DNA of 64,000 bases, from the NCBI RefSeq assembly GCF_902459465.1, contig NC_047064.1:310001-374000 (forward strand), read 5' to 3'. This document shows positions 42,047 to 64,000 of the stretch, one piece after another (the first letter of the stretch is position 1; every line of letters starts with the position of its first letter). The stretch is from Asterias rubens. Its lineage: Eukaryota. The notes under the pieces are model-generated. The model was given only the letters and a program-made list of their open reading frames with translations. It was not told the origin of the DNA and made no database searches. A program made the position numbers and the translations under genes.

Positions 42047-42119
42047 ATGGCGTCGTTTCCATGCAACTCTTTGCTGTTGCTGACAACTTTGATAGCAGTG
42101 TTGATGTCGTGTGATGGAC
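42047..42119 (+). CDS. Gene 2 exon 1: signal peptide
   Basis: gcgATGGCG..GGAC|gtaagt; MASFPCNSLLLLTTLIAVLMSCDG with a hydrophobic core. Confidence 0.8.
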
Positions 42120-45100
42120 GTAAGTTATCCAAGAGACTTGGTACTTTTGTTTTCTAGGTCGGGCTGTTCTTAGTGGCGTAGACCCAATCTCCATCATGTT
42201 TGTATATCATCATGTTCTTTGTTTACATTCAAGTCTTCAGCCACACCTCCATCTTTTATTGTTTAGTGTTGTAACAAACAGTAATGTGTTGATATAAATT
42301 CATGAGTCTGTTTTATCAGGTTGCTCCAATGTCACGAATGTGACAAATAATTGAAACCACACTCCACATAGTATTAGTATAGAGGAAGAAAATTCATTTT
42401 GTGTTTTAAAAAGGTTTAGATTTAAAGGAACATTACAGAATTGATTTTTGCTCACAAAACAGTTGCTGGCAGTGTATAAGCACTTTATGCAATCCACCAT
42501 ATACATAAACTAACAAACCTATAGAAGTTTGAGATTGATCGGCCATTTGGGTCATGAGAGAATAGTGAAAAACCGATAACAAATTTTGCATTGCATCGAT
42601 GCCAAAATAAAAATGAATAAAACTCTCACTGAGCGATTAACTCCAAACGCGAAGTTAGATTGTTTATTTCTCATCAAATATGAAATTTCAGACAGAAATA
42701 TTTCAAGGGATGTTTTCTACTATCATCATCAATAGACCGTGTAAGTTTTATCTAAATCTGTGATCTTCACGATTTTTGTTTCTTAACCAATTCTGTATTG
42801 TGCCTCTAACTTACTGGGCTCAATTTCATCTCAGACTCTCTATAGCATGACAAATTGTTGGCTCTCTGTCCCATTCCATCTGACAGCACCTCATCTAAAA
42901 GCGCTGGGATGGGCATAATTCTACCTCCAGTCCATGGATACTTGATACTTGATAATTATTATATTCCCTGGTCACCCTGTCCTGTTTTATGTGTTTACAA
43001 AAGATTCCATTGACCCAATATTAATGTTGTTCTTTTGTGTAATTTCATTCCAAATAATCATTGTAAATACTTGCCTTGTACTGAAAAGTAGGGCTTGGTC
43101 GCAACACTATTCTTAATTTGGTTTGAAAAGATGGTTTAGGTACTATGATACAAAGAGCTATATTGTATGTATGTGTGTGTGATTAGATGTATCACTGCAT
43201 CCTGAGTGAGAATTTGTACAAGCTCCATCAGTCCATCCCAGTGGTCTCGCTTATAAAAGCAGAACAATGCAAGCTAATTTTTTTAACAGGTTTGAAAAAT
43301 GTTTTGTTTTGCTTCAAACATCTGATTATTTTTCGCTTGTAGTACAGCTAGCACAGCACTTGCCCTGTATGCGGAGAACAGTGACTGTAAGTGTCAGCCC
43401 CAAGTTATGCCATTGGGCCCTGCTCTGAATTATATGCATTTGTTAGAAATCCCTTTTGCTAATATAAACTTGACCCTACCAAGGAAAGAGTAGAGAATCA
43501 AAGCTTGGTATGGTCAGAGTGTATGAGTATACGCCATAAATTACCTCTCGGTTTCTGGTTCTGAGCCAACTACATGTACTTGGGTTATAGGTGCTGAAAC
43601 AGCATTTCATGGCCACAAGCAAAAATATTTGTGTTTATCCGACGATGTTAAAGACACTAGACACAATTGGTAATTGTCAAAGACCAGTCTTTTCACTTGG
43701 TGTAGCTCAACATATGCATAAAATAAATCATAATTGTGAAAATTTGAGCTCAATTGGTCTTCGAAGTTGGGAGATAATAATGAAAGAAAAAACACCCTTG
43801 TCACATGAAGTTTATGGCTTTCAGATGCTTGATTTCGAGACCTCAAATTCTAAATCTGAGGTCACGAAATCAAATTCGTGGAAATCGTCTTTCTCAAAAA
43901 AACTACTTTACTTCAGAGGGAGCCATCTCATAATGTTGTATACTATCAGCAGCGCCCCATTACTCGTTACCAAGTAAGGTTTTATGGTAATAACTATTTT
44001 GAGTAATAACCAATAGCCTTGAAAGCCATTATACACTTTCAGTAAAAAAAAAAAAAAAAAAGTTCACAGATTTACAAATAATTTACAGGGTTTACAGAAG
44101 GTAATGGTGAAAGACTTCTCTTGAAATATTTGTCCATGAAATGCTTTACTTTTTGAGAAAACATTAAAACAATATCAATTCTCGATAGCGAGAATTACGG
44201 ATTTATTTTAAATACATGTCATGACACGGCGAAACATGCGGAAACAAGAGTTTTTCTCCCGACTCCGATGACCGATTGAGCCTAAATTTTCACAGGTTTG
44301 TTATTTTATATATAAGTTGTGATACACGAAGTGTGGGACTTGGACAATACTGTTTACCGTAAGTGTATAATGGCTTTAAGTGATATATTTTTTGAATAAT
44401 TTTTTAAAATGAATCTGAAAACAAATTCTCTGAGAGTATTTTTGACATTTAAAAAACCCCAATTTCTGAGCTATACCACAACCCCTAGTAAATGTAAAAA
44501 TACTTGGATGAATCTTTGATGTATCAATCACAGCTCTGCTTTTTTTCTCAGAGAAGATATCAAGATACCAAGTTATACTCAGTTCGGTGTTTTAAACATG
44601 TGTGCCATTTAAACATGTGTGCCATTTTTGTTGTCAGTTGTTCCTGAAATTGTACATGGTTTACTAGATGCCAACCTCTTAACACTGTAAGGTCATTTCT
44701 GAAAGCCCCTGGTGTTAGGTAATTTGATTACTGAATACCAAGGACATCTCCTTAAACTTATTAATGTCCCAGGTGGTTCAAGTTTAGGATTTGACATAAA
44801 TCATTACATCCAAGGTGAAAGGAAAACCAATTGCAAATTGATGTTGTAATGTTAACTTTTTGTTATTTACTCCCAGGGGAATAATGAAGTAAAAGTATAA
44901 TATTTTGTGTTTTGTTTTGGAAAATCATCGAAACTCAGGAATGCACTAAAAAACAAACCCTATTCAAGAATTAGACTCAGTTTTTTTATAAATGTTGTCA
45001 TTAACAGTAAAAGTTAAACTTTTTTTCATTAGAGCCGGTGATACTCTGTGAAAAGCCAAAAAAATCACTCAAAAAAATATATTTTTTAATGTTTGGGGCC

Positions 45101-48100
45101 AAAAATCTGACATAACATCTTTAACAAAGTTCACACTGGAATGGTTTAAAACAAAATGGCTTTTCACACACTTTTAATGTGAGAAACTAGAAGTTAGAAA
45201 CTTTTTCCCCACTTTAATAAGTACTCTGTCTATTTGAAAATGAGTACATTGCAAAACTTGATTTGACCTTGGAACCCTTATTGGAGTGGTTTGTGGTTTA
45301 AAAATAACACAGACAGCCCATCTGAAAAAAGTATGTCTCTACTGAAGAAACTTTGGCTTGTAAGAAACCAGACTTTGTTTTTGCAAGGTACACAATAATG
45401 TGAGATAAAGTCTGCACTGATGGAAGCATCCTGCTGTCCAGTAAATTGACTATCTAGTTTTGTAATATGGCCTTTCCCCAGGCTCGTCACCTGGGTTGTC
45501 ATGTCTGGTTGTGTTGCTATGGTTATTTTACCTCTGACTATTGGATCTCTGTGTGATGTTTATTTAGTTTAAAATGTTTTATTGTATGGGGTGTTGTGCT
45601 GTTCTAACTTGAGGTTGGTGTGTGTCTTGCTGTGTACTAGTTTCCCGTCCACATATTTTGTTTCCCCCTCAAGGACACGCAGCAACTGTTTTATGAAGTT
45701 TTAACTGAACAGTTCAGCAGGAAAAAAATAAAGAATTTCAAAATTGTATCAAATTATTGACTTGAAATAGCTTGACATTGTCACTGTGATAACCTAGATA
45801 TTGAATACAACGATGTTGCTGAAACTCCTAAAACATAATAGGATCATGCTGTTTGTACTTCACTCTCTACAAAAATTCTCACAATGTTCAGTCAGACTAG
45901 CATTTTCATCGGTTTAGAACTTGTATTATTGCCATCAAGAGATTTCCTCCCATTTAAAGAAAAACATCATTAAGTAAAGAAATTTGTTAGAACTTGAATA
46001 AATAGAAGGTCTCTGTAATGACAGCCATTTGATTGCGAGCAAAATCAGGAACACTGTAATATGAAGTGGTTTAGTGTGGGGTACTATACTCAAAATAATT
46101 ATTGGCATAAAACCTTTCTTGGTGACGAGTAATGGGGAGACGTTGATGGTATAAAACATTGTGAGAAACGGCTCCCTCTGAAGTGCCATAGTTTTGGAGA
46201 AAGAAGTAATTTTCCACGAATTTGATTTTGAGACCTCAGATTAAGAAATTGAGGTCTCGAAATCAACCATCTAACTGCACACAACTTCGTGTGACAAAGG
46301 TGTTTTTTCTTTCATTATTATCTCGCAACTTCGATGACCGATTGAGCTCAAATTTTCACAGGTTTGTTATTTTATGCATATGTTGAGATACACCAACTGT
46401 GAAGGCTAGTCTTTGACAATTACCAATAGTGTCCACTGCCTTTAAGCTCTTGTTTGTCAGAGTGGGGGATAATGGCATTGTGGGGTCAACAAGATATTTG
46501 ACAATCATTGCTTTACCCTTCTGATGCGATGAGTTACCTTGATAACATTCTCTTTATCAAACAGGTCCTACCGCACCAGACTTCACCAGTTACTTCACAT
46601 CACCGACTAACCTAAGAGTTGAATGGACTCCAGGAACAGATGATCGAGGAGGAACTGTTAATGGATACAGGCTTCATTACAGACTGGGGTCAAAGGGCAA
46701 GATGGTGAAACTCAAGATCCCTGACTCACCATTAATTTATGATATTACAGGTAAAGTGATCCGCTCATTTGCATAATATGTTGATAATAGTTTATGCAAA
46801 ATATAATTTTGCTCCATTATGTCTAAGCATCAACACAAGGATCTATAAGGCATTTATAGAGTGTTCGCCACAGCGATAAATCCAAATAAAGAAAATGCTC
46901 TTTTTTCCTTTAGCATGATATTGTTCTCTGTCTCAAACTTTTTATACACTATATAAAATATCAGTCGTGTCAGCAAAAAAATAGGAGTATTCACCGACAC
47001 ACGGTTGAATCACATGAGTCCTGTGAGCAAAAGAAACAAAAGAATGAATTGTGTTAACTGGATTCACAAGACACGGAGACTTATTATTGAGATCAATCTT
47101 TCATGTCTCACAGTACTTGTTCAAATAAAAACAGTTTAATTCATGTTAAACTTTGTCAGAAATTTGTCTGTAATTTTGATTCTTGTAAAAACAACGTTGG
47201 TCCAGTCAACACTTTGAGCTACAGAAAGCTTTGTGATCTTGTGGATTTTCCCTCAAACTCGAGCCCTGTGCCAAAAATAAAACTTGATTGATACTTTTGG
47301 GGTTGGTAGTGTAATCAGAGCATACATTCCCCAAGTAACATTTTGTAAGGAAACATTTTGTAAATAAGTAGCACTTAAAAAGTTCTAAACAGATTAATAT
47401 TTCCTTCTTGTATTAGTGTTATTATGATGATTATGTTTGTTTTCTAGGTCTCCAGAATTGTGGAGATTATTTTGTAAGGATGGCAACAACTACAACTTCT
47501 GGTTTGAGTCGTTACAGTAGCTTTGCATCAGCAGAGAGTAAGTAACCTTTATACAGTTATAATCTTTTCAAATTTATGGGATTTTTCATCTTTTATTTTG
47601 TTATCAACTGATTATTTTTTTCTTCAAACTTACAGTCCTTTTTTTAAGTGGCGTTGGTTAAGTCTTGAATGAAAATTTGTATAAAAGTTGGCTAACATTC
47701 AAAGTATTACAAAATATAAATCTAATAAAAAGAGAGAAGTTTTCAGAGAGCTGTAGAAGCACACTTAACATATATTTGTTTATTCTGTTTTGTTTTTTTA
47801 ACATAAATTGTTTTTGTTATTGGATAATCCAGAAGTTGCATCAGCGCCCAAGAATCTGAACGTGGTTGCACAGTCTGGCACATCAGCAATGGTAAACTGG
47901 ACCCCTCCATCCAAAAGTGCTTGCATTGGTGGTTACCAGCTACAATATGGTCCCAATGAGAATAGTCTGAACACGATGACGCTACCTGCGGACTTAGACC
48001 AGTACATCCTAGGGGATTTACAGTCGGGTACCAGCTATCTGCTGACGTTAGCAGCTACTTCTACGGGTGAGGTGGGAGAGGAAGCTTATGCACAGTGGTA

Positions 48101-51100
48101 CCAAGGTAAGATGGAAGTCCTACACATTCTGATATCACTTTTACTGCATGCCCTCTGAGTAAGATATTGGGGTGCATTCTATTCTTATCAATAAGGCATG
48201 CTACTTTCCTTGGATCAGCTGATTTCCTCTTTTATTCTCAGTTTTACCATTCAAAATTGAAAAAATACTATACAAAATCATTACAATTTGAATTGACCTC
48301 TTTTTTTGTGAAGTTACAGTTGCATGCCTGATCATTACTGTTTGACCTCTAAGGTGGTTTAGTGGAATGACTTAAATATATAAGGTGTAAAAATTGTGTG
48401 ATGCCATGTTTCTTTTGGTAAGTACTTGGTGACTTCTCTGATGTGACAACTTTTAGATATAAGACATTCTAAATAGTAAACTTTTATTTTGAGGGAGTGT
48501 TGGCTCTAAAAAAGAGCCTGTGTGGTTTTGCCTATCAAACATATACTCTGCTCGTCTTCAGGAGAATTTTTTAGATCTGGTTTTGCTTCATCATGTAACC
48601 TTACTTTTCTAGTTGAGACCTAAAGGACTAAAAAGAGATACTGAGATAGGTTACCAGACTACAACACTGGAACTATGTATCAAGACCTGAGTGATCGCAT
48701 CAATGGTTTGCATTTATTGTACCTTTTTTAATAATCACAAACTAGATATTTGAACGAAGCAATGTGGGAACATAAACTATAATTGTTAACAGAGGTTATT
48801 GTGTCCAATCAGCACCAGAAAGTTCATCTAAAGTACCTCCAATACCAAGAAGGATTCGAAGCAGCCAGTCCGACACAGAGATAGTGGTAACTTGGGAACC
48901 TCCATCAGATACAAGTATTCCAATTGAAGGATACACCCTGACCTATGGAGAAGGAGTTGCTTCTGAGCACCAACGAAGATTCACAAGTACTCAAACTGAG
49001 TTTACCATCACCGATCTTATTCCTGATACTTCATATGTTCTCAGTCTGAAAGCATTTAATCAAGCTGGTGAAGGGAAGGCATTGGTTTTAGAAGCCTCAA
49101 CAGTGCCAAGCAGTAAGTTAATCGTCAGCTATTTCCTTGCAATCTGAACTTCGACTCAAAGAGAAGATCTTTGTTTCTTACTGAAAGCTTTTAAAGCACA
49201 ATACACATTCATAATCTGAACATACATCCTCGGGGATAAACTAGAATTTACCCTTTGGGCTGTTTTAGTTCTTCAATTCAATAAAATTCAAAAATTGTAT
49301 ATTAAAACATGTATCGCAGTTAAAACTGAACACATGCTAACATCAAATATGTTTTAAAAATACATCAAATAGAAATTAACAATAAGGAGATAAACAAGAA
49401 GTTATTCTCTGTTTGGAAAGGATCTTACATACATTGTGTTAACAGTCAATGACAGTCAATGTTTCAGCGTAACAACTGGTGAAGTTGAGTGTCAAATCAG
49501 TTCATTACAATGACCTTGGTGTTAAACAATACTACATTTTTTCAGTGCCAGGAAGTGTGGTTCCTCCAATACCACTAGGCATTCAAAGCAGCCAGTCCGA
49601 CACAGAGATAGTGGTAACTTGGCAAGCCCCGTCTGATGCAAGTATTGAAGGATACATCCTGTCCTATGGAGTAGGAGCTCCGACTGAGTACCGAGAGCGA
49701 TTTCCAAGTACTCAAACTGAGTTTACCATCACTGATCTCATCCCCGATACTGCATATGTACTCAGTCTGAAAGCATTTAATCAAGTTGGTGAGGGGCCGG
49801 CATTGTATTTACAGGCCTCGACAGTGCAACAAAGTAAGTCTCCTGATTACACTTTCAAGCAGCATGCTTCATCATAAATTTTCATCATTGCTTAGTTGCC
49901 AAAATTAGTGTCTCAATTTAGTGCTGTCCTTCATCATCAAAGTACCATCCTTTCAGTCTCAGTTTAGTACCCAGCTCATTCACAATTATTTCATCATCAT
50001 CGCTTACAGGTCAAAATTATAGTCTTATCATCAAGTAATACTGCTTTCCATCATCAAGCAAGTAACTAGCTCCATTCATCAGTTAAGTTAGTACTCTCCG
50101 TCATCTTCCATCTTCATGCTAGTATCATCTTTTGTCGTCAAGGGAGTACCGTCTCTCATCTTCATGTTAGTGTCAAGGTAGTACCATCCCTCATATTCAA
50201 TGTAGTACCATCTTCAGGTGTCAAGGAAGTACCCCACTTCATCTCATTTTCATGAGATAGTCCTCTCCTTCATGATGGCATCAATGCCATCATGCATCAT
50301 CAAGTTAGTACCCAACTTCATCATCATATTCATAAGCCAGCCATCTACTTTATCATGAAGTTAGCACCATCTTTCATTGGCAAGTTAGCACCCAGCTCCT
50401 TCATATCCATCAGTAAGCTCTCTCCATCATGATACTAGAAGCCCCACCACATCATCAAGTACCCAGCTTCATCATCATATTCATTAGAAATTCACGTCCT
50501 TCGTGATAGAGTCAGTTTCACCTCTCATTTTCTCATAAGTACTATCTTTCATTGGCAAGTTAGCACCCAGCTCCTTCCTATCCATCAGTAAGCTCTCTCG
50601 ATCATGATACTAGAAGCCCCACCACATCATCAAGTACCCAGCTTCATCATCATATTCATTAGAAATTCACGTCCTTCGTGATAGAGTCAGTATCATCTCT
50701 CATTTTCTCATAAGTACCATCTTTCATTGGCAAGTTAGCACCCAGCTCCTTCATATCCATCAGTATGCTCTCTCGATCATGATACTAGAAGCCCCACCAC
50801 ATCATCAAGTACCCAGCTTCATCATCATATTCATTAGAAATTCACGTCCTTCGTGATAGAGTCAGTTTCACCTCTCATTTTCTCATAAGTACTATCTTTC
50901 ATTGGCAAGTTAGCACCCAGCTCCTTCCTATCCATCAGTAAGCTCTCTCGATCATGATACTAGAAGCCCCACCACATCATCAAGTACCCAGCTTCATCAT
51001 CATATTCATTAGAAAATTCACCTCCTTGGTGATAGAGTCAGTATCATCTCTCATTTTCTCATAAGTACTATCTTTCATTGGCAAGTTAGCACCCAGCTCC

Positions 51101-54100
51101 TTCATATTCATCAGTAAGCTCTCTCCATCATGATACTAGAAGCCCCACCACATCATCAAGTACCCAGCTTCATCATCATATTCATTAGAATTTTCACCTC
51201 CTTCGTGATAGAGTCAGTATCATCTCTCATTGTCTCATAAGTACTATCTTGCATTGGCAAGTAAGCACCCATTTCCATCGAATTCATCAGTTGTGTCTCT
51301 TCTTCAAGGTGTTAAACAGCCTACCATCTCTTATCATCAAGTACCAACCTCCAGCATCATATTTTGAGTTAGTCGTCTCTTTCATAAAGTTGATAACATC
51401 TTCCATCTTCAATCAATGTAATAAAGCACTGAACAGGTACAAGATGCATGGGCCCAGAGCCAGGAGGAACGATGAGTGCGCAGGCACGCCTGTGCAGTTG
51501 GAGCAACCTGTCTGGAAAGACGACCAGAATGTCTCGATAAGCAGTGTATGTTACACTGTCTCTTCTATTGTTACTCTCTAGTCTCATTTGTTAACTGACC
51601 TACAGTCATCTTCACATCAGTTGCCTTATTTAACAACTTACCTTTTTCCATCAGTTGTCAGTTTCCATAGTTTACTGTTTTCCATTTGTTGCCATATATT
51701 ATTATTTGCCTATTTCCATCAGTTGCCTTTTTCCATAATTCCTTTTCCCATAATTTACCTTCTTTCCATCAGTTGCCTTTTTCCATAGTTCCCTTTTTTT
51801 CATTAGTTGCCTTTATCCCTCAGTTCCCTTTTTCTATCAGTTGCCATCTCCACTCAGTTGCCTTTTTCCATCAGTTGCCTTTTTTCCCACCAGTTACTTT
51901 TTTCAATCACAAATATCCAACGATTTTCAACTCCAGTGTTTTTTATGAGTTTACTTTAACAACATTAATGTTACCTAACATTCTAACCTGGTCAGAAGCC
52001 AAATATGCCTCATAATTTCAGTCTAGACAGTCAATTACAATGTAATCCTTTTTCACAACTTCCAAAAGATGTCTCCAGCAGACCGAAACTAATTTGTGTG
52101 ACCCATTCTTCCATTCTGTGGTTGATTTGGGAAGCTTTTTTACAGGCCCAATTTCATCGCTATGCTCAAGTTCTTAACAATTTCCTGCATAGCAAAAATG
52201 AGAAGGATACCAGTCACTGAATGGCATATGTGCCATGATGTTTGGATGGTAATCCTAAGTTGCTAAGCATTGCTGTTTGTGCTTAGATACTTTTAGGAGT
52301 TACACATGACTTCTTTAAAGTGAACAAGAAATTGTATTTTGGCTGATAACCTTATTCTGGCTTAAAGCAGCCCAGATTATAAAAACAATGAAAAGATTCA
52401 TGTGTACAAATTTAAAATGAGAGTCTTGTTCTATTTCATCCTAAATGGACTACAACAATGAATCCTTGAATTGCTGAGTATTTACAGTGTCATGATAGAT
52501 GAAATAAAATGTGACTTCAAAATTGTAATTTGTCCATCGGGGAATTTAACAATTACTATGTGAAAAGGAGATAAACAAATATACTTGTCGGAATTTACAA
52601 CAACAACAACAACAACAACAACAATATTTTGCACACTTTTTTGTAATGAACTGTCTTGTGCAACTTACTTAACTCATCATATTTTCTTTTTGTATGTGTC
52701 TAGCTGGACCACCAATTGCACCTACAAACATCCGTGCCAATCCAACGTCACCCCAGACTGCCATTATATCATGGAGCCCTACATCATCAGGTCTCACTCG
52801 GTATACCTATCTTTATGGTCCAGTTGGCTCTCCAGATAGTAAACTAACCCAAGGACACATTGAAGCTAGTTCCATGATGGTTGATCTAGAAGGATTAGAT
52901 CCTGGTGTGGAGTACGTGATTAAGGTTTCATCAGTCAATAATGTTGGTGAGAGTCATCCTGCTTCACTTCTATGGTCTCAACCTGGACCTGCTACACAAA
53001 GTAAGACTCTCTGTCTTTAGGTTTTCTTGTAAATCTTTTCAAGTTTTCTTACAATTTAGTCTACTGATGGTCTGTCACAATCATAATCGTTCTGCTGAAC
53101 TAAGGACCATCTTAGGTCTTGTACTAAACTCAATGGCATAACTAAAGGGGCAAGTGAAGCATGGGGAATGTCGACAGATCATTATGTGTGGCTTCTCCAT
53201 GAGTTTAAAAAATACTCTTTCAAGAGATCTTTGCACCACCACATCCTTTCAGTGCTTCAAGTTCAGTTTAAAAACATATTTTTTTAACTGTTCTTTCTAA
53301 ATCTTAGTCAAATTTTTTGAATAATTGTTACCACTAATTTTCTCTAAAGTGCGCCTTTATTGACAGATATGTGCTCGGTATAGATATATTATTATTATTA
53401 TCATGCAATCTTGTACCTTCTTATGTTGATCAGAGCCTCCAGAGATCCCTCTACCAGCTGCTCCTGGTCAAGTCTCAGTCCAAAGCACCTCACCCCGTAG
53501 TGCAGTCATCACATGGACACGCCCTGCAGGAAGCATCCATATTGCTGGATACATTGTAGGGTTCGGACTAACTGGTGCATCACAGAGTGAACTAATGTTA
53601 AGAAGTGTTGCATCAGAACAGCTTGCTCATGAGATTGAAGGCTTGAAAGTTGGTACTAAGTATAGAGCTACAGTTCAAGCATATAATAATGATGGTGATG
53701 GGCCGGTAGCAAGGGCTGAATGGCATCAACAAGATGTACCAGAGCAACTCAGTAAGTACATCCAATTAAAGTTTGATTAGACATGAGAATATTGTGCAAA
53801 ACTGCAATCTATGCTTGAACTTGAATATAGTCATCTGAGAAATTTGAGTCAATGCACAACTTTTATCCCTCGGGGTCTTGTACACAAACACTATGAAAGT
53901 AAAATAAAGAGCACTTAGAAAAAGTAGATCAGTCAAAAACAGAAAACAGAGAGATGTTGAATGGTAAAGTGCATCACTAAATATGGGAAACGGTAAAAAA
54001 TAACCCAAAAAACAAACATATACACGCACAAACGAATACGCCTTGTAGTTGTAGTTAACAGATGTTTCTGTTTAACTGTTTTCATTCATTCGGCCTACAT

Positions 54101-57100
54101 TTTAAGTGTTTACATGTCTAAACTTTTGGCTGTTGGTATAGATTGTTTCCACATGTCAATATATGCCTGTGAAATTTTTTCACAGGACTGGGGAAATTAC
54201 AGAGTATACAGTGCTAACACACATCGGTGTATGGGTAGATAAACCAAAATTAATAAAGTTAGAAAGCTTGATGCAGCTTCAAGCCAAAACTGAAGTTGTC
54301 ATTAAAGATTATTATGACGTTATTAATATTATCCCCCAAGGTTTACCAACCCAACCCAGAGGTGTCTTGGCCTACAGCTCTTCACCATCCTCCATAGATA
54401 TCAGCTGGATGTTATCTGAAATAACGGAACCAATCAGTGGATTTCAAGTTTCCTACGGAACTAATCCAGAAGCTGAAGAGTTCCGAGTTGAAGTAGAGAG
54501 AGAATCAGATTCAGTAGAGATACAAGACTTGAAGCCTGATAGTTTATACTATCTCAAGATTTATGCAATAAATGCAGCTGGGAGGAGTGATGCAGTCAGA
54601 AGAAGTGTACAGACTTTGGGTGAGTTTATTTTGAATTCATGGCCTTGCCCTCAGGATACGTAGTTACACTTTTCGAGGCAACAGGGCCTTTCCCTCAGGC
54701 AACCTAGTTACAGGCAACTTGAAGGCAACCAATTGCAGTGCATGCTACAGGACCATTTTGGTGGCACATGAGTCTTTCTTGAACATTATCTTATAAACCA
54801 CAAGAAAAAAAGGTGATCTTTAAAATGTGAATGGGTTTCCTTCTTGGAGATTGCCTGAAACTGGTTGCTTGTGTGACATACCCCTCAATTCTTAAGATGA
54901 CAAGTCAAGAAAATAAAATGTTTAAGATGATAAGTGAGGAACTTGTGGACCAGGTTGTCTCAGTGGTTTCTTCACTGCCTTTCCCCTCTACACGCCCTGG
55001 TTCACATCCCATCTCAGACCAGAGCCTTGCATTTGGGTTGGGTTTTCAGTCCCTACCTGATTGGGCGAATTTTTCCTACGTGGGGTTTTCTTCTCATAGA
55101 TGAAACATGACGTTCTTCATCATCTCATGTTTTCATACTTAACTATGTTGGATGTGTTCTAAAATAAATTAAAATATAACAAAACGTTGATAGCTAACTT
55201 GCATAGTTTTCCCACACATTCTTATAACAAAACAATGCCTTACAACCTGTTTGTTTAAATACGAAGTCATATTTGTTTTTGACAACAATTTTGTTTCTTT
55301 TATTTCCAGATTTGCCACCTGGTAAGTTTATCTTTTCATTTCTCTTTTCTTTGGGATTTAGTTTCATAAAAAGTGATAATGCCTTTTATGTTTTTTTTGA
55401 AAAGTTTCTCTGCACACGTGTCATTTTGTAATACATTTTGTTTTGTGTTATTCTACAAATTGTTTTAGAAAACTCAACAAACGTTTAAAAACTTTTTTAA
55501 ATGGCATCAAGGAAATTTGAATAGTTTACCTTTATAAACTATAGAGACATAGAGATATGTGAGTGTGATATGCGCTGTACAAAAATGGTTCTTTGTTATT
55601 ATTGTTTTTATTGTTTAAACTCTAAGACAATGAGGAATCTTGATTGTTATTGTTGAATTCTTATGGAGTTACAAATGATTCCTGGTTTGATTTAACACTG
55701 ATGGAGACCTCTTTAGACTATTGATCATGTATACCTTCATCGTGTTATCTCGAAAAACCTGGAGTTTCTGATTCATTGTTGTTTTCACAAATAATTTGTT
55801 TTCCAAAACATTTAATTTCTTAAAGACACTGGACACTATTGGTAATTGTCAAAGACCAGTCTTCTCACTTGGTGTATCTCAACATGTGCTTAAAATAACA
55901 AACCTGTGAAAATTTGAGCTCAATTGGACATCGAAGTTGCGAGATGATAATGAAAGAAAAAAAACACCCTTGTCACATGAAAATGTGTGCTTTAAGAGGG
56001 TAGATTTCTAGACCTCAAAAACACCCTTGTCACATGAAGTTGTGTGCTTTAAGAGGGTAGATTTCTAGACCTCAAATTCAGGCCTAAAAATGCTCTAAGC
56101 AGTGGATATTACAACAGAAAAAAAGTCTGAAATATAAATGTATATATACAGAGGAGCGATGTAATCATCAACAGCAACAGTGCACGGAGCAATTTGGCAC
56201 CCTGCCCTCTGACGAGGAGGATGGGAATACAGTGTGCCCAAGAATCCTTCAAATTCTTAACTGTCTTCAGTTGCTACGGGATACCTGCATGCACGAAGAT
56301 GGGTACCGGGGAAAGGTTGATACAGTTCGTGGCACGTTCCTGAGGAAATCGTGTAATAGAAACCCAAGGTCACCAGCTGCTGGGGAGGTTATTGCAGGGG
56401 TAGCTGCTCCAACAGGTATCCCTTAATGAGGTTGACCCCCTCCAGCACCTTGCCCCCTCCTCCATCTCTCCCTGATAATGGCTCCAACAGGTAGCCCTTA
56501 ATGAGGTTGACCCCCTCCAGCACCTCTCCCCCTCCTCCATCTCTCCCTGATACAGCTCAAACAGGTAGCCCTTAATGAGGTTGACCCCCTCCAGCACCTT
56601 GCCCCCTCCTCCATCTCTCCCTGATAATGGCTCCAACAGGTAGCCCTTTACAAGGTTGACCCCATCCAGCACCTCTCCCCCTCCTCCATCTCTCCCTGAT
56701 ACAGCTCAAACAGGTAGCCCTTAATGAGGTTGACCCCCTCCAGCACCTTGCCCCCTCCTCCATCTCTCCCTGATAATGGCTCCAACAGGTAGCCCTTTAC
56801 AAGGTTGACCCCATCCAGCACCTCTCACCCTCCTCCATCTCTCCCTGATACAGCTCAAACAGGTAGCCCTTAATGAGGTTGACCCCCTCCAGCACCTTGC
56901 CCCCTCCTCCATCTCTCCCTTATAATGGCTCCAACAGGTAGCCCTTTACAAGGTTGACCCCATCCAGCACCTCTCCCCCTCCTCCATCTCTCCCTGATAC
57001 AGCTCCAACAGGTAGCCCTTAATGAGGTTGACCCCCTCCAGCACCTCTCCCCCTCCTCCATCTCTCCCTGATACAGCTCCAACAGGTAGCCCTTAATGAG

Positions 57101-60100: not shown

Positions 60101-63100
60101 AGTGTAATATTTTACTTCTGGCATTTTTTTAATATTTTTTTTTTATTAATTTTTTTAGGGATTTGAATGGCTTTATTACCCAAAGTTCATGATAATCTCT
60201 TCAGTTTTTTTTGCCAAGTATGGTTTAAAATGCTGCAATACTGCCTGCAAAACCTAATACTTAGAGAAGCATGCTCCTTATATAGCATGAATGGATAATG
60301 TGTAATATTGATGTGACTTAACAGTTATAAAGAAAGGAATAGTATTGTAATTAATAGTTATTAATAAATCAGCATTATTTACACTAATTAACTAAGTAAA
60401 AATAACTAATGTTAATTAAATTAATGTCCTATTCTTGAATAGCATACTGTTCCTCTCCTCTGTATTAAGGAAACCAATTCAATCAAATGAACACTCACTA
60501 TGGTTACTACACATGCATAAAACACTTGAATGATTAAAGAGTTGGGAGAGATTCATCAATTAGGACACAATAAGTATATCCAGCAGTTTGATTGTTTCCT
60601 TAATTGGATGAAAGTATAAAGCAGGGCCCAATGGTAGAGAGCTGCATAAGCAAACAAAGTGCTTAAAAATCTTCTATGAACCCCAAATAAGCATTGTTAA
60701 ACCTATTCTAAGCCTAATGTTGTTGTGCTAATAGACCTGTTGTGCTTAATAAGCTTTAGGAAGTTGGAGCCAGGTTTTAATCTGGCTGGTAACAAAAGTC
60801 CAAAATATGCAAGAAAAACTGAGTACCTCCTAAAATGTTCTTCTAACTGGTCTTCCTGGAATTACTTCCACAGAAGTGATTGAACCTCCAGTTAACTTGC
60901 AAACTACAATCGTGGATACATCAACAATTCGTCTTTCATGGACTGATTCCAGCTTAGGACATTCACAGGTTGTGAATGATAACCGCTTCTACAATATCCA
61001 ATATGGAGTTGCTGGAGAGGAGAGGTGAGAAACGATTAAAGAGTATTAAATCTTGTTGGAGCTGTTCAATTGTTTTAATCCTATTTAGATTTTTTAAGGT
61101 ATTCCCGGAAATCCGGAGCGGTTATCCTTTGCAGGAAGACCAATCCGTAATTGGAATACACAATCTCAGAAACATATATGACAATAACGTTTCTCAAATT
61201 CAAATATTTGGGATAAAAGCGGACTTATTTTGCCTTATTTTGACTTCTTTCTTAATTATGCTTTATCTTAAGAAGCTGTTGTACTTCTAACCAAGTCAGT
61301 TTTTATTGCCATTCATTTTAAGAGTGATTACCAAACGAATACAGACTCTTTAAAGGTTCCCTAATAGGATTAAAACTGTCTCTAGCTACCTAACTAATCT
61401 CAGTAGTCTAGTTTGTAAGACCTCTGCTCTGGAAGACTCTTTAAAGGTTCCCTAATAGGATTAAAACTCTAATCTCAGTAGTCTAGTTTGTAAGACCTCT
61501 GCTCTGGAAGACTCTTTAAAGGTTCCCTAATAGGTTTAAAACTGCATCTAGCTACCTTACTAATCTCAGTAGTCTAGTTTGTAAGACCTCTGCTCTGGAA
61601 GACTCTTTAAAGGTTCCCTAATAGGATTAAAACTGTCTCTAGCTACCTAACTAATCTCAGTAGTCTAGTTTGTAAGACCTCTGCTCTGGAAGACTCTTTA
61701 AAGGTTCCCTAATAGGATTAAAACTCTAATCTCAGTAGTCTAGTTTGTAAGACCTCTGCTCTGGAAGACTCTTTAAAGGTTCCCTAATAGGTTTAAAACT
61801 GCATCTAGCTACCTTACTAATCTCAGTAGTCTAGTTTGTAAGACCTCTGCTCTGGAAGACTCTTTAAAGGTTCCCTAATAGGATTAAAACTGTCTCTAGC
61901 TACCTAACTAATCTCAGTAGTCTAGTTTGTAAGACCTCTGCTCTGGAAGACTCTTTAAAGGTTCCCTAATAGGATTAAAACTCTAATCTCAGTAGTCTAG
62001 TTTGTAAGACGTCTGCTCTGGAAGACTCTTTAAGGGTTGCCTAATAGGTTTAAAACTGCATCTAGCTACCTAACTAATCTCAGTATTTTAGTTTGTAAGA
62101 CGTCTGCTCTGGAAGACTCTTTAAAGGTTCCCTAATAGGTTTAAAACTGCATCTAGCTACCTAACTAATCTCAGTAGTCTAGTTTGTAAGACCTCTGCTC
62201 TGGAAGACTCTTTAAAGGTTCCCTAATAGGTTTAAAACTGCATCTAGCTACCTAACTAATCTCAGTAGTCTAGTTTGTAAGACGTCTGCTCTGGAAGACT
62301 CTTTAAAGGTTCCCTAATAGGATTAAAACTGCATCTAGCTACCTAACTAATCTCAGTAGTCTAGTTTGTAAGACATCTGCTCTGGAAGACTCTTTAAAGG
62401 TTCCCTAATAGGATTAAAACTGTCTCTAGCTACCTAACTAATCTCAGTAGTCTAGTTTGTAAGACGTCTGCTCTGGAAGACTCTTTAAAGGTTCCCTAAT
62501 AGAATTAAAACTGCATCTAGCTACCTAACTAATCTCAGTAGTCTAGTTTGTAAGACGTCTGCTCTGGAAGACTCTTTAAAGGTTCCCTAATAGGATTAAA
62601 ACTGCATCTAGCTACCTAACTAATCTCAGTAGTCTAGTTTGTAAGACGTCTGCTCTGGAAGACTCTTTAAAGGTTCCCTAATAGGTTTAAAACTGCATCT
62701 AGCTACCTAACTAATCTCAGTAGTCTAGTTTGTAAGACGTCTGCTCTGGAAGACTCTTTAAAGGTTCCCTAATAGGTTTAAAACTGCATCTAGCTACCTA
62801 ACTTATCTCAGTAGTCTAGTTTGTAAGACCTCTGCTCTGGAAGACTCTTTAAAGGTTCCCTAATAGGTTTAAAACTGTCTCTAGCTACCTAACTAATCTC
62901 AGTAGTCTAGTTTGTAAGACCTCTGCTCTGGAAGACTCTTTAAAGGTTCCCTAATAGGATTAAAACTCTAATCTCAGTAGTCTAGTTTGTAAGACCTCTG
63001 CTCTGGAATTGCAGCTGGAAGTCTACATAAATAACCTTTCTGAATCATTAACGGTTGACAGTGAATTTATACTTTATTTGTTTTGTTTGACTTCAGGAAG

Positions 63101-63318
63101 CTTAACAAACGCACTCGAGAAACAAGTTACGAGATTGACTTATTTTCTACTTTATTTATTTGACTTCAGGAAGCTTAACGAACGTACTCGAGACACAAGT
63201 TATGAGATTGATGATCTTCTACCTGGTGTTTCATATCAGTTTACAGTTCAGCTCATATTGGATCCGCAACGTAGGAGTGCTCTTAGTGAACCAGTTGTTG
63301 ATGCAACCAGGGATCCAG
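42047..63318 (+). CDS. Gene 2: signal peptide plus at least 8 FN3 domains, Ig-less Neogenin/DCC-derived paralog (3'-partial)
   Basis: 13 in-phase exons: signal peptide, FN3-like, six FN4-type domains, FN5-like. One FN4-type copy matches gene 1 FN4 at 43/90 residues without gaps (manual count). Intron positions match gene 1 FN3 and FN5. Confidence 0.85.
42422..42809 (+). mobile_element. TTAA-type MITE family D
   Basis: ttaa|aggaacattacagaattg..caattctgtattgtgcct|ctaa. Confidence 0.75.
43348..43386 (+). CDS. Gene 2 exon 2 (39 nt; completes the signal cleavage site)
   Basis: gtacag|..|gtaagt; phase 1-1; (P)STALALYAENSD(C) with an A-L-A signal peptidase motif. Confidence 0.65.
43648..44016 (+). 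mobile_element. TTAA-MITE family A copy with the right TIR cut off
   Basis: Collinear with 27949-28334; ends at ..taaccaatag where family B begins. Confidence 0.85.
44019..44379 (+). mobile_element. TTAA-MITE family B, full length
   Basis: aaagccattatacactt..aagtgtataatggctttaa. Confidence 0.8.
46088..46445 (-). mobile_element. TTAA-MITE family A copy (reverse orientation)
   Basis: Reverse complement of 27949-28334; one TIR intact (..gtgtccactgcctttaa). Confidence 0.85.
46565..46750 (+). CDS. Gene 2 exon: FN a N-part (Neogenin FN3-like)
   Basis: aaacag|..|gtaaag; PTAPDFTSYFTSPTNLRVEWTPGTDDRGGTVNGYRLHYRLGSKGKMVKLKIPDSPLIYDIT. Confidence 0.85.
47448..47537 (+). CDS. Gene 2 exon: FN a C-part
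   Basis: ttctag|..|gtaagt; LQNCGDYFVRMATTTTSGLSRYSSFASAE. Confidence 0.82.
47833..48105 (+). CDS. Gene 2 exon: FN b
   Basis: atccag|..|gtaaga; VASAPKNLNVVAQSGTSAMVNWTPPSKSACIGGYQLQYGPNE..GDLQSGTSYLLTLAATSTGEVG. Confidence 0.9.
48813..49112 (+). CDS. Gene 2 exon: FN c (FN4-like)
   Basis: aatcag|..|gtaagt; KVPPIPRRIRSSQSDTEIVVTWEPP..IEGYTLTYGEG..TEFTITDLIPDTSYVLSLKAFNQAGEG. Confidence 0.92.
49546..49833 (+). CDS. Gene 2 exon: FN d (FN4-like, close duplicate of FN c)
   Basis: tttcag|..|gtaagt; VVPPIPLGIQSSQSDTEIVVTWQAP..IEGYILSYGVG..YVLSLKAFNQVGEG. Confidence 0.92.
50366..51272. repeat. 175-bp tandem repeat, about 5 copies
   Basis: atcatcaagtacccagc recurs at 50451, 50626, 50801, 50976 and 51152. 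Confidence 0.93.
52704..53000 (+). CDS. Gene 2 exon: FN e
   Basis: gtctag|..|gtaaga; GPPIAPTNIRANPTSPQTAIISWSPTSSGLTRYTYLYGPVG..EGLDPGVEYVIKVSSVNNVGES. Confidence 0.9.
53434..53751 (+). CDS. Gene 2 exon: FN f
   Basis: gatcag|..|gtaagt; PAAPGQVSVQSTSPRSAVITWTRPAGSIHIAGYIVGFGLTG..EGLKVGTKYRATVQAYNNDGDG. Confidence 0.9.
54341..54619 (+). CDS. Gene 2 exon: FN g
   Basis: cccaag|..|gtgagt; LPTQPRGVLAYSSSPSSIDISWMLSEITEPISGFQVSYGTNP..QDLKPDSLYYLKIYAINAAGRS. Confidence 0.9.
55310..55321 (+). CDS. Gene 2 candidate 12-nt microexon
   Basis: ttttgtttcttttatttccag|atttgccacctg|gtaagt; phase 1-1; (D)LPP. Confidence 0.65.
55820..56078 (+). mobile_element. 3'-truncated TTAA-MITE family A copy with an internal duplication
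   Basis: ttaaagacactggacactattggtaattgtcaaagac..; aaaacacccttgtcacatgaa..gacctcaaa is duplicated. Confidence 0.8.
56407..57717. repeat. C-rich 74/75-bp satellite with largely alternating units
   Basis: ctccaacaggtagcccttaatgaggttgaccccctccagcacc..ccccctcctccatctctccctgata(atgg|cag). Confidence 0.95.
58046..58101. other. Perfect 25-bp stem / 6-nt loop hairpin
   Basis: accatggaggaaggaagagaaggag-tttgag-ctccttctcttccttcctccatggt. Confidence 0.9.
59266..59679. mobile_element. MITE with about 44-bp imperfect TIR and TA/TATA ends (Tc1/mariner-like)
   Basis: tataggttttctcggacaaattcgg..ccgaaattggccgagaaaacctata. Confidence 0.75.
59883..60005. repeat. About 41-bp tandem repeat x3
   Basis: tcttgattcttgattcatgctataactgaaccaatgatata. 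Confidence 0.85.
60874..61024 (+). CDS. Gene 2 exon: FN h N-half (FN5-like)
   Basis: ccacag|..AG|gtgaga; VIEPPVNLQTTIVDTSTIRLSWTDSSLGHSQVVNDNRFYNIQYG resembles Neogenin FN5 (WADNSLPKHQKITDSRYY); phase 1-2. Confidence 0.88.
61344..63008. repeat. Satellite of 91-bp (x15) and 75-bp (x4) units
   Basis: gactctttaaaggttccctaatagg..ctgctctggaa; 15x91 + 4x75 = 1665 bp, which equals the span. Confidence 0.95.
63170..63318 (+). CDS. Gene 2 exon: FN h C-half
   Basis: cttcag|..|gtaatg; KLNERTRDTSYEIDDLLPGVSYQFTVQLILDPQRRSALSEPVVDATRDP; phase 2-1. Confidence 0.87.
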
Positions 63319-63657
63319 GTAATGAGTTTTGCCTTTTTTTCCCCACTTTAGTCAGAAGAAGAGACTGGGACACTTCTAAACTAAGAAGTAAGACTTCTTG
63401 TCTTGTCACTAATTCACTCAATTTGTGTTATATCAGTTGAGCCAAAGAAGGGTTATTTTTGTTTTATTATTAATTAAATAAGCAGAAGTCCACAGGATAA
63501 AATGGGAGAGTATACCTATAGTGATTTTAACCTAAAGTTTTTAAGAATATGCATTGAAATGGTGTCTCTTGGAAAAATCAGAATTGCGATTGTTCTGGAG
63601 ATTTCATAAATGTAACTCAGTCTTTAGGAGAATGCTAGACCTGCCTACTGTATACAA

Positions 63658-63819
63658 ATATTGACTGCTTCGAGTGCTATGGTTAAAACTATGACTCCCG
63701 AGGTGATCCCCGGGAGCGTTCTATTTTCCCGAGGCGAAGCCGAGGGAAAATAGAACGCTATGGGGATCACCGAGGGAGTCATAGTTTTTAACCATTGCAC
63801 GAGTAAAAGCAGTCAATAT
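63658..63819. mobile_element. Palindromic foldback element (about 160 bp)
   Basis: atattgactgctt..ttttccc-gaggcgaagccg-agggaaaa..aagcagtcaatat. Confidence 0.85.
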
Positions 63820-64000
63820 GTGTTTTATAACACCCCAAACATTTCTAAATACTGTACTATTATTATTAAGTTACAGACCTGAATGCTACAATCCACGGAC
63901 GACGCGAATACAGATTGCAAACACTTTTACTGTGCTGCATGTAGTGTCGTGCAATCCGAAATGGTTACAGACTATTAATTTATCATCCTCGTACACGCAA

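What the first reader, a model, noticed from the sequence alone, without database searches (positions are those of the whole stretch)
42047..63318. Ig-less Neogenin-derived tandem paralog: candidate netrin decoy or multivalent co-receptor next to its parent
Seen: 6 kb after the Neogenin stop a new gene starts with a signal peptide (MASFPCNSLLLLTTLIAVLMSCDGPSTALA) spliced straight to FN3 domains, with no Ig exons found in between. FN a is split by a phase-1 intron at the same place as gene 1 FN3 (..YTIQ|xLEK versus ..YDIT|xLQN). FN h is FN5-like and split by a phase-2 intron like gene 1 FN5. FN c matches gene 1 FN4 at 43/90 residues without gaps. Established: FN4-FN6 of DCC/Neogenin bind netrin (FN4, FN5) and RGM (FN5-FN6), while the Ig horseshoe binds other partners such as Draxin. 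Inference: a partial duplicate kept only the ligand-binding stalk, forming a receptor plus decoy or co-receptor pair that I cannot match to a described gene.
Basis: partly seen in the sequence, partly recalled or inferred. Interest (0 to 1): 0.92.

Follow-up and report, generated by a model that had tools for sequence, protein, structure and literature searches.

The report
Secreted Ig-less neogenin-stalk paralog in starfish
Right after the starfish neogenin (netrin receptor) gene sits an expressed, conserved gene for a secreted protein made only from copies of the receptor's ligand-binding stalk plus two thyroglobulin-type modules, so it may soak up or present the receptor's ligands, though no binding has been tested.

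Summary
The window is Asterias rubens. At 42047, 5.9 kb after the neogenin stop, a gene starts with a signal-peptide exon. RNA contigs from three runs join that exon directly to the first FN3 exon (42119>46565). No Ig exon lies between them.

RefSeq already predicts the gene ("neogenin-like X2" 1065 aa, "fibronectin-like X1" 1153 aa). I found no paper on it. The gene runs about 6 kb past the window. It encodes a signal peptide, nine FN3 modules and two thyroglobulin type-1 modules. It has no transmembrane segment, GPI signal or P motifs, so the product is secreted and cannot be a membrane co-receptor.

A domain tree places module a in the DCC-family FN3 clade, c and d in FN4, and h in FN5. Module i is FN6-like only by intron position and weak PDB hits. 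Modules b, e, f and g sit just outside FN4. Introns inside a, h and i match those in the parent's FN3, FN5 and FN6.

dN/dS against A. amurensis is 0.12. Acanthaster planci has a syntenic Ig-less ortholog.

A ligand-trap role is plausible for netrin but doubtful for RGM. An earlier scan note (s1-150336) covers 47833-54619 of this same stretch.

The parts
42047..42119 (+). Exon 1: start codon and signal peptide (24 aa), phase-1 donor
   Evidence: Sequence. It is the only hydrophobic segment of the protein. RNA contigs start upstream of it and splice from 42119.
42120..46564 (+). Intron 1 (4.4 kb), full of high-copy repeats, with no Ig exon
   Evidence: RNA contigs skip it. tblastn with Ig1-4 regions gives no hit. 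Repeat depth reaches 1e4-1e7 at 42400-42800, 43600-44400 and 46000-46600.
46565..47537 (+). FN a (exons 46565-46750 and 47448-47537), FN3-type, split by a phase-1 intron as in neogenin FN3
   Evidence: Exon model translates to P0151. Same split codon position as gene-1 FN3. Inside the DCC-family FN3 clade at 98/96. It keeps 0/7 FN3-specific invariants, and its PDB best hits are generic.
47833..48105 (+). FN b, single phase 1-1 exon, sister to the FN4 clade
   Evidence: Pfam fn3 1.4e-12. Tree 96/82 with the FN4 clade. Best PDB hit is RPTP delta. Acanthaster ortholog is 63% identical.
48813..49112 (+). FN c, FN4-type module
   Evidence: 43/90 identical to gene-1 FN4. Inside the asteroid FN4 clade at 99/86. 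Keeps 5/8 FN4-specific invariants.
49546..49833 (+). FN d, FN4-type module, tandem copy of c (69/91 identical)
   Evidence: Best PDB hit is Neogenin FN4 at 80 bits, against 58 for the next family. Tree position. Keeps 6/8 invariants.
52704..53000 (+). FN e, single-exon FN3 of uncertain type
   Evidence: Pfam fn3. Groups with f and g next to the FN4 clade at 85/82. Its best PDB hit is the second FN3 of PDB 1fnf (the fragment deposited as fibronectin FN7-10, by my own knowledge, hence FN8) at 76 bits, against 29 for neogenin.
53434..53751 (+). FN f, single-exon FN3 of uncertain type
   Evidence: Pfam fn3. PDB best hits are titin, Dscam and neogenin. Tree position.
54341..54619 (+). FN g, single-exon FN3, in the FN4 position just before the linker
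   Evidence: Pfam fn3. Aligns with DCC FN4 in the collinear BLASTP alignment d-i versus FN1-6. PDB best hits are generic.
55310..55321 (+). 12-nt micro-exon (DLPP) in the g-h linker
   Evidence: Needed for the CDS to translate to P0151. It has strong splice signals and is conserved in A. amurensis.
56152..56415 (+). Alternative 88-aa cassette exon with 6 Cys (isoform X1 only), in the g-h linker
   Evidence: Maps from P0160. 86/88 identical in A. amurensis. RNA runs hold 0.74-0.84 of its sampled words. No Pfam or Atlas match.
60874..63318 (+). FN h (exons 60874-61024 and 63170-63318), FN5-type, split by a phase-2 intron as in neogenin FN5
   Evidence: PDB: the 11 best hits (E 2.4e-07 to 0.0084) are all neogenin/DCC FN5; four weak unrelated hits follow at E >= 0.03. 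35% identical to spider neogenin FN5. FN5 clade at 96/99. Intron position and phase.
63319..64000 (+). Start of the intron before FN i; the gene continues past the window to about window-equivalent 70054
   Evidence: Locus L003 is identical to the window where they overlap. It holds FN i (64233-64346 and 66652-66870), the TY-like module (67340-67505 and 68143-68195) and the TY module (68764-68914 and 69597-69673).

Best explanation
This is a real, expressed, conserved starfish gene in tandem with neogenin. It encodes a secreted protein of 1065 or 1153 aa.

Architecture: signal peptide; an FN3-type module (a); six single-exon modules (b-g), of which c and d are clear FN4 copies; an alternatively spliced linker; an FN5-type module (h); an FN6-position module (i); and two thyroglobulin type-1 modules. 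It has no Ig domains, no transmembrane segment and no cytoplasmic tail.

Origin (inferred): a partial tandem duplication of the neogenin FN3-FN6 stalk at or before the starfish crown group, followed by amplification of the phase 1-1 FN4 exon and addition of a duplicated two-exon thyroglobulin unit.

Mechanism (inferred, not shown): the protein acts outside the cell as a soluble or matrix-held binder of neogenin ligands. The main candidate is netrin, bound through the FN4-type modules c/d and the FN5-type module h. The protein would thereby sequester or present ligand to the neighbouring receptor. The variable g-h linker (micro-exon with or without the 88-aa cassette) would set the geometry, as the FN4-FN5 linker does in DCC.

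My odds: architecture and secretion 0.95; neogenin-stalk origin 0.85; retained netrin-type binding about 0.35-0.4; RGM binding about 0.1.
For: Architecture and secretion:
- The exon model translates exactly to RefSeq P0151 and P0160.
- RNA contigs join the signal-peptide exon to FN a.
- The only hydrophobic stretch is the signal peptide, and the C-terminus is not hydrophobic.
- Pfam finds 9 fn3 hits plus Thyroglobulin_1 at 43 bits against a 20.6 cut-off. No Neogenin_C or phosphatase domain is found.
- Both TY units align in tandem with thyroglobulin.

Constraint and age:
- dN/dS is 0.118 over 805 codons against A. amurensis.
- The same gene order, neogenin > gene 2 > TTC21 on the opposite strand, holds in A. 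amurensis and A. rubens.
- Acanthaster planci has an 833-aa FN3 gene 5.6 kb after its neogenin, with the same signal-peptide-to-FN a splice. Its FN a and b are 52% and 63% identical.

Origin from the stalk:
- Tree: a in the FN3 clade at 98/96, c and d in the FN4 clade at 100/98, h in the FN5 clade at 96/99.
- Intron positions and phases match the parent's FN3, FN5 and FN6.
- After the Asterias orthologs, nearly all the best-scoring named whole-protein hits are DCC.

Ligand logic:
- NET1 LN binds FN4, NET1 LE3 binds FN5, and RGM binds FN5-6 (PMC8063088).
- A soluble DCC FN5 domain traps netrin-1 (PMC2715117).
- FN4-FN5 linker length controls netrin binding in DCC (PMC5563286).
Against: - No binding data exist.
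- Residues that are invariant and specific to each neogenin domain type are only partly kept: c 5/8, d 6/8 (the invariant Arg of the V-R-G-Y motif is Glu in both), h 2/4, a 0/7, i 1/7.
- Three modules of uncertain type (e-g) separate c/d from h, unlike the short FN4-FN5 linker of the receptor.
- FN e scores far better against fibronectin than against neogenin in the PDB.
- FN i is not placed in the FN6 clade by the tree.
- Nothing in the neogenin pathway explains the thyroglobulin modules.
- The Acanthaster ortholog shows no strong TY hit in its Pfam list.
Confidence: 0.45

Rival explanations
1. It is a neofunctionalised matrix or body-fluid protein. The stalk modules now serve only as an FN3 spacer or adhesive array that has lost netrin and RGM binding. 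The active end is the thyroglobulin type-1 pair, acting for example as a cysteine-protease inhibitor or carrier, as in p41 invariant chain, saxiphilin or IGFBPs.
For: - Type-specific invariants are lost in a (0/7) and i (1/7), and there is a charge reversal at an invariant FN4 residue in c and d.
- b, e, f and g give generic, fibronectin-like or RPTP-like PDB best hits.
- The TY region hits thyroglobulin, saxiphilin, IGFBP-1, p41 and EpCAM.
- An orphan Cys-rich cassette sits in the linker.
Against: - c, d and h remain clearly FN4-type and FN5-type under purifying selection (dN/dS 0.05-0.10).
- The gene has stayed next to neogenin at least since the split of the Asterias and Acanthaster lineages.
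- The Acanthaster ortholog seems to lack a strong TY hit, so TY may not be the conserved core.
Confidence: 0.4
2. The gene is not neogenin-derived. It is a mosaic assembled by exon shuffling from unrelated FN3 genes (RPTP, tenascin, fibronectin) and only resembles neogenin in places.
For: - PDB best hits of b (RPTP delta), e (fibronectin FN8, 76 against 29 bits) and g (RPTP delta) are not neogenin.
- All module exons are phase 1-1 and so can be shuffled.
- FN4-type modules also occur in an unrelated Acanthaster mosaic protein.
Against: - a, c/d and h sit inside the DCC FN3, FN4 and FN5 clades.
- The order a...c,d...h,i is collinear with FN3-FN6.
- Three intra-domain introns match the parent in position and phase.
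- A constrained tree with b, e, f and g inside the FN4 clade is not rejected and has a slightly higher likelihood (p-AU 0.56).
- The gene lies in tandem with neogenin.
Confidence: 0.08
3. It is a membrane-anchored multivalent co-receptor working in cis with neogenin.
For: Only the tandem position and the shared stalk modules. The last coding exon ends in phase 1 with the stop codon completed in a further exon, so an unseen alternative 3' exon cannot be formally excluded.
Against: Both annotated isoforms end right after TY2. No hydrophobic segment exists beyond the signal peptide, and there is no GPI-like tail. Only about 3 kb separates the gene end from the convergent TTC21 gene.
Confidence: 0.03
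4. It is an annotation artefact or a decaying duplicate without function.
For: The names are automatic and there is no literature.
Against: - Spliced RNA contigs are found in several runs.
- The reading frame is intact in two Asterias species with dN/dS 0.118, while introns are 92-97% identical.
- An 82%-identical transcript comes from an unidentified, unnamed NCBI source (P0153).
- Acanthaster has a syntenic ortholog.
Confidence: 0.02

Closest known systems
DCC/Neogenin family netrin and RGM receptors (parent: A. rubens neogenin, gene 1 of this window)
   Same: - FN3-, FN4-, FN5- and (weakly) FN6-type modules in the same order.
- Identical intron positions and phases inside FN3, FN5 and FN6.
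- An alternatively spliced linker at the FN4-FN5 position.
- Nearly all the best-scoring named whole-protein hits are DCC.
   Different: - No Ig1-4 horseshoe, no FN1 or FN2, no transmembrane helix, no P1-P3 tail.
- Six single-exon modules where the receptor has one FN4.
- A C-terminal thyroglobulin type-1 pair.
- Secreted rather than membrane-bound.
Soluble receptor fragments used or produced as traps (recombinant DCC-5Fbn; shed neogenin ectodomain)
   Same: A free FN5-containing stalk fragment outside the cell. DCC-5Fbn binds netrin-1 and blocks receptor multimerisation (PMC2715117).
   Different: Those fragments are laboratory constructs or proteolytic products of the receptor itself. Here a separate gene encodes the stalk-only protein, and its ligand binding is untested.
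Thyroglobulin type-1 module proteins (thyroglobulin, saxiphilin, IGFBPs, p41 invariant chain, EpCAM)
   Same: Two six-Cys modules with the C-x-C-[IV] motif. Pfam PF00086 scores above its cut-off, and the pair aligns in tandem with thyroglobulin 617-710.
   Different: I know of no described protein that combines TY modules with an FN3 array. None of the 86 homologs outside Asterias carries PF00086.
Acanthaster planci LOC110984704 (Fz-Ig-FN3x2-SRCR-LDLa mosaic)
   Same: It carries two FN4-type modules inside the same asteroid FN4 clade. They are 48-53% identical to gene-1 FN4 and to c/d.
   Different: The rest of its architecture is unrelated and it is not syntenic. It shows that the neogenin FN4 exon has been shuffled more than once in starfish.

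Membership tests
DCC/Neogenin receptor family | Four N-terminal Ig domains (horseshoe) | tested here: not met
   RNA contigs join the signal-peptide exon straight to FN a. tblastn finds no Ig-like exon. Pfam finds no Ig domain in P0151.
DCC/Neogenin receptor family | Six FN3 domains of types FN1 to FN6 in order | tested here: inconclusive
   FN3-, FN4- and FN5-type modules are present and in order. No FN1 or FN2 type is present. The FN6 type rests only on intron position and weak PDB hits. Grouping i with FN6 is not rejected by the AU test (p 0.35) but is not shown either.
DCC/Neogenin receptor family | Single transmembrane helix and a cytoplasmic tail with P1-P3 motifs (Pfam Neogenin_C) | tested here: not met
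   No hydrophobic segment after the signal peptide. The protein ends after TY2. No PF06583 hit. Gene 1 does have the P3 motif.
DCC/Neogenin receptor family | Shared gene structure of the stalk (split FN3, FN5 and FN6; single-exon FN4) | tested here: met
   Same split codon and phase in a/FN3 (phase 1), h/FN5 (phase 2) and i/FN6 (phase 1).
DCC/Neogenin receptor family | Binds netrin (FN4, FN5) and RGM (FN5-FN6) | not testable with these tools
   Proxy only: type-specific invariant residues kept are c 5/8, d 6/8, h 2/4, i 1/7.
Thyroglobulin type-1 domain proteins | PF00086 match above the gathering score, with a six-Cys pattern | tested here: met
   43.2 bits against a 20.6 cut-off for TY2. The region 923-1065 holds 12 Cys. 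Both units align with thyroglobulin. Both are split by a phase-2 intron at the same place.
LAR-type receptor tyrosine phosphatases | Ig domains, a TM segment and cytoplasmic phosphatase domains | tested here: not met
   The full-length product has no PF00102 and no TM segment. Only modules b and g have RPTP delta as best PDB hit.
Tenascin / fibronectin | EGF and fibrinogen modules (tenascin) or FN1/FN2 modules (fibronectin) | tested here: not met
   Pfam finds none. Tenascin and collagen XII FN3 domains form separate groups in the tree. No fibronectin sequence was available for the tree.
Gene-encoded soluble decoy receptors (functional class) | Secreted copy of a receptor's ligand-binding domains, without signalling parts | tested here: inconclusive
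   Secretion and loss of the signalling parts are met. Retention of ligand binding is unknown.

The most novel reading that the evidence does not exclude
Starfish carry a conserved gene, separate from the receptor gene, for a multivalent soluble netrin trap or presenter. It is built from the neogenin stalk, sits next to its parent receptor, and is tuned by alternative splicing of the FN4-FN5-position linker. This would be the first natural Ig-less, membrane-less member of the DCC/neogenin lineage.
Probability: 0.3. Interest if true: 0.75.

Novelty: new variant of a known kind. Interest (0 to 1): 0.52.

Why it matters
Soluble stalk fragments of DCC and neogenin are known only as shed products or engineered traps. 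A separate, conserved gene that encodes just the netrin/RGM-binding stalk, lies next to the receptor gene and has its own alternatively spliced hinge would be a natural experiment in extracellular tuning of guidance signalling. Binding assays and knock-downs in starfish larvae could test this directly.

The locus also shows cleanly how one symmetric exon (FN4) can be amplified and shuffled into new secreted and mosaic proteins.

If the protein has lost ligand binding, it remains an example of a receptor stalk recycled as matrix protein. That would be of modest interest.

Tried and rejected
- Representative search: the search with FN d was swamped by giant multi-FN3 proteins ranked on summed score. 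Only P0013, P0060 and P0115 were useful.
- False negative: two word-indexed homolog searches with P0151 found no ortholog outside Asterias apart from one unnamed transcript, P0153. I nearly concluded that the gene is restricted to Asterias and its close relatives. The synteny look-up in Acanthaster showed that to be a false negative.
- Patiria: the neighbourhood of its neogenin could not be fetched, because isoform X1 was not among the listed cluster members.
- Acanthaster: the full 833-aa product could not be retrieved, so whether it has TY modules is unknown.
- Papers: the netrin-DCC/neogenin and RGM-neogenin structure papers (PMC4412161, PMC4369087, PMC4730555) are not held. I therefore used family-invariant residues as a proxy for interface residues.
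- Cassette exon: it has no Pfam hit, and its Atlas scores are only about 0.5.
- Rejected readings: RPTP (no phosphatase domain), tenascin or fibronectin (no EGF, fibrinogen, FN1 or FN2 modules), GPI anchor (no hydrophobic tail), pseudogene (dN/dS 0.12).
- Note s1-150336 (six-fold FN4 amplification) is only moderately supported. The tree gives 85/82 and the AU test does not reject it, but the PDB best hits of b, e, f and g are not neogenin.
- No structure prediction was run. FN3 folds do not discriminate between the domain types.

Full report
**What the window is.** Exons of the second gene match RefSeq protein P0151 (XP_033624169.1, 'neogenin-like isoform X2', Asterias rubens) at 96-100% identity per tblastn segment. 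A refined exon model then translates exactly to the first 805 residues of P0151. The A. rubens locus L003 is letter-identical to the window over the part where they overlap. The window contains no N runs.

Gene 1 occupies about 2.2-36.1 kb on the + strand. It carries FN1-FN6, a transmembrane exon and a C-terminal P3 motif that is 80% identical to that of spider neogenin. It is the single starfish DCC/neogenin ortholog, annotated as 'neogenin-like' with about 2000-2060 aa.

**Checking the observation.** The second gene starts with ATG at 42047, 5,940 nt after the gene-1 stop. Exon 1 (42047-42119) encodes a 24-aa signal peptide and ends at a phase-1 GTAAGT donor. The next exon starts at 46565 behind a pyrimidine tract and AG.

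RNA-derived contigs from three runs cover 42000-42119 and continue without any intervening letter at 46565-46748, then at 47833 onward. These are X2 record 8, X8 record 22 and X1 record 7. Non-repeat intron sequence has near-zero depth in those runs. X7 covers the introns evenly and is DNA.

tblastn with the Ig1-4 parts of five DCC/neogenin proteins gives no hit in intron 1. The FN3 and P3 parts of two of them (P0154, P0162) hit both genes. The Ig-less start is therefore real.

FN c matches gene-1 FN4 at 43/90. FN a is split in phase 1 at the same codon as gene-1 FN3. FN h is split in phase 2 at the same place as gene-1 FN5. The only slips are the residues after the signal peptide (the real sequence is CDG-R-PTAPDF) and two missed exons.

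**Full anatomy.** A CDS built from the window translates exactly to the first 805 residues of P0151. The exons are:
- 42047-42119
- 46565-46750
- 47448-47537
- 47833-48105
- 48813-49112
- 49546-49833
- 52704-53000
- 53434-53751
- 54341-54619
- a 12-nt micro-exon at 55310-55321 (DLPP)
- 60874-61024
- 63170-63318

Isoform X1 (P0160, 'fibronectin-like isoform X1', 1153 aa) adds an 88-aa cassette exon with six cysteines at 56152-56415. RNA runs hold 74-84% of its sampled words. It is 86/88 identical in A. amurensis. It has no Pfam or Atlas match.

Beyond the window the gene continues for about 6 kb:
- FN i in two exons with a phase-1 split
- a divergent thyroglobulin type-1 unit
- a canonical thyroglobulin type-1 unit

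Each TY unit is split by a phase-2 intron just before its C-x-C motif. Pfam gives nine fn3 hits and Thyroglobulin_1 at 43 bits against a cut-off of 20.6. Both TY units align in tandem with thyroglobulin 617-710.

The only hydrophobic window is the signal peptide, and the C-terminus (…AARLRC) is polar. There is no Neogenin_C or phosphatase domain. The product is therefore secreted.

**Is it functional and how old is it?** Against the A. amurensis ortholog (locus L001) there are 46 synonymous and 18 non-synonymous differences over 805 codons. dN/dS is 0.118. Introns are 92-97% identical.

Gene order is the same in both Asterias species: neogenin, then this gene, then TTC21 on the opposite strand. 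An 82%-identical transcript from an unidentified, unnamed NCBI source exists (P0153).

Word-indexed homolog searches found no ortholog in other starfish. The neighbourhood of Acanthaster planci neogenin told a different story. It shows an 833-aa FN3-only gene 5.6 kb downstream on the same strand. Its signal-peptide exon ends in the same phase-1 donor after …CEG. It splices to an FN a ortholog (52% identical), followed by an FN b ortholog (63% identical). Neogenin's own FN domains are 46-69% identical between the two species, so the paralog evolves about as fast as its parent.

The Ig-less gene thus predates the split of the Asterias and Acanthaster lineages. By my own knowledge that split is early Mesozoic. 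The Acanthaster product shows no strong TY hit in its Pfam list. Either the TY pair is a later addition or that model is incomplete.

**Where the modules come from.** PDB sequence searches per module gave:

| Module | Best PDB hits |
|---|---|
| a | generic (titin, RPTP) |
| b | RPTP delta 65 bits, neogenin 40 |
| d | Neogenin FN4 80 bits, next family 58 |
| e | fibronectin FN8 (second FN3 of 1fnf) 76 bits, neogenin 29 |
| f | titin 69, Dscam 60, neogenin 60 |
| g | RPTP delta 47, neogenin 38 |
| h (first exon) | the 11 best hits all neogenin/DCC FN5 |
| i | 10 of 15 hits neogenin/DCC FN6, all weak (27-29 bits) |

I also built a maximum-likelihood tree of 108 FN3 domains. It included DCC/neogenin from vertebrates, spider, nematode, molluscs and four starfish, plus tenascin, collagen XII, PTPRQ and FNDC3A.
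- All six DCC-family domain types are recovered as single groups.
- a falls in the FN3 clade (98/96).
- c and d fall in the FN4 clade (100/98), within a starfish sub-clade (99/86).
- h falls in the FN5 clade (96/99).
- b is sister to the FN4 clade (96/82).
- (g,(e,f)) is the next branch out (85/82).
- i is unresolved.

AU tests do not reject i grouping with FN6 (p 0.35). They do not reject b, e, f and g lying inside the FN4 clade (p 0.56, and the constrained tree is slightly better).

The order is collinear with FN3-FN4-FN5-FN6, and three intra-domain introns match. Together this shows a partial duplicate of the neogenin stalk. The evidence that all of b-g descend from FN4 is moderate, and the fibronectin-like score of e is a caveat. 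This evidence bears on scan note s1-150336.

FN4-type modules also occur twice in an unrelated Acanthaster mosaic protein with Fz, Ig, SRCR and LDLa domains (P0115). The FN4 exon has therefore been mobile in starfish.

**What it most likely does.** In the parent family:
- netrin's LN domain binds FN4
- netrin's LE3 domain binds FN5
- RGM binds FN5-FN6 (PMC8063088)
- the length of the FN4-FN5 linker controls netrin binding (PMC5563286)
- a free FN5 domain acts as a netrin trap (PMC2715117)

The starfish protein is a secreted chain with two good FN4-type modules, an FN5-type module, and an alternatively spliced linker exactly at the FN4-FN5 position. The linker is the micro-exon with or without the 88-aa cassette. 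Annotated neogenin isoforms differ by about 14 aa at the same place, in line with note s1-151175. The best-supported mechanism is therefore extracellular binding of netrin-type ligand, as a sink or as a presenter to the neighbouring receptor.

Conservation of residues that are invariant and specific to each domain type across 10-11 DCC-family proteins is only partial:
- c keeps 5/8 and d keeps 6/8; in both, the invariant Arg of the V-R-G-Y motif is Glu
- h keeps 2/4
- a keeps 0/7
- i keeps 1/7

This makes RGM binding unlikely and netrin binding uncertain. I put retained netrin-type binding at about 0.35-0.4. The rival, a matrix or body-fluid protein whose active end is the TY pair, sits at about 0.4. 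Membrane co-receptor, unrelated mosaic and pseudogene are minor alternatives.

**Comparison and novelty.** The protein works, at best, like a decoy form of neogenin. It fails three defining features of the DCC/neogenin family: Ig horseshoe, transmembrane helix and P-motif tail. It should be called a stalk-derived paralog, not a neogenin. The gene is predicted in RefSeq under two inconsistent automatic names. I found no paper mentioning it. I rate it a new variant of a known kind. It is of moderate interest now and of clearly higher interest if ligand binding is shown.

Noticed in passing
window 56406-57590: A 74-bp tandem array of about 16 copies (GC about 0.5) begins inside the last 10 nt of the cassette exon. 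Each unit repeats the exon's donor motif (CAACAG|GTA), so the cassette's 5' splice site is the first of many near-identical candidates.
   Followed up: partly
window 63082-63222; L001 28301-28906: A 73-bp unit holding the acceptor and the first ~50 nt of the exon at 63170 is duplicated (1.9 copies) in A. rubens. In A. amurensis it is expanded to about nine copies. Only the last copy is used, and 73 is not a multiple of 3.
   Followed up: partly
window 42400-42800, 43600-44400, 46000-46600: Intron 1 holds very high-copy repeats, with contig word depth of 1e4 to 1e7 in both RNA and DNA runs. A joint between opposite strands (43688 with 46396) suggests inverted copies of one element.
   Followed up: no
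P0115 residues 952-1147 (Acanthaster planci LOC110984704): Two nearly identical neogenin FN4-type modules sit inside an Fz-Ig-FN3-SRCR-LDLa mosaic protein. This is evidence that the phase 1-1 FN4 exon was shuffled into another gene in starfish.
   Followed up: partly
window-equivalent 67340-69673 (L003 31294-33627): Both thyroglobulin type-1 units are split by a phase-2 intron just before their C-x-C motif, so a two-exon TY unit was duplicated. The stop codon of the gene is completed in a further exon.
   Followed up: partly
gene 1, FN4-FN5 linker (window about 9.8-12.6 kb); P0257, P0264, P0251, P0255: Annotated starfish neogenin isoforms have either 1 or 15 residues between FN4 and FN5. This fits the 14-aa cassette exon noted at 11266-11307.
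   Followed up: partly
gene 1 FN5 (window 12645-13321): FN5 is the least conserved stalk domain of neogenin between starfish: 46-47% identity between Asterias and Acanthaster or Patiria, against 55-69% for the other five domains.
   Followed up: no
window 50369-51271 and 61343-62970: Two large intronic tandem arrays: 175 bp x 5 between FN d and FN e, and 91 bp x 18 inside the FN h intron.
   Followed up: no
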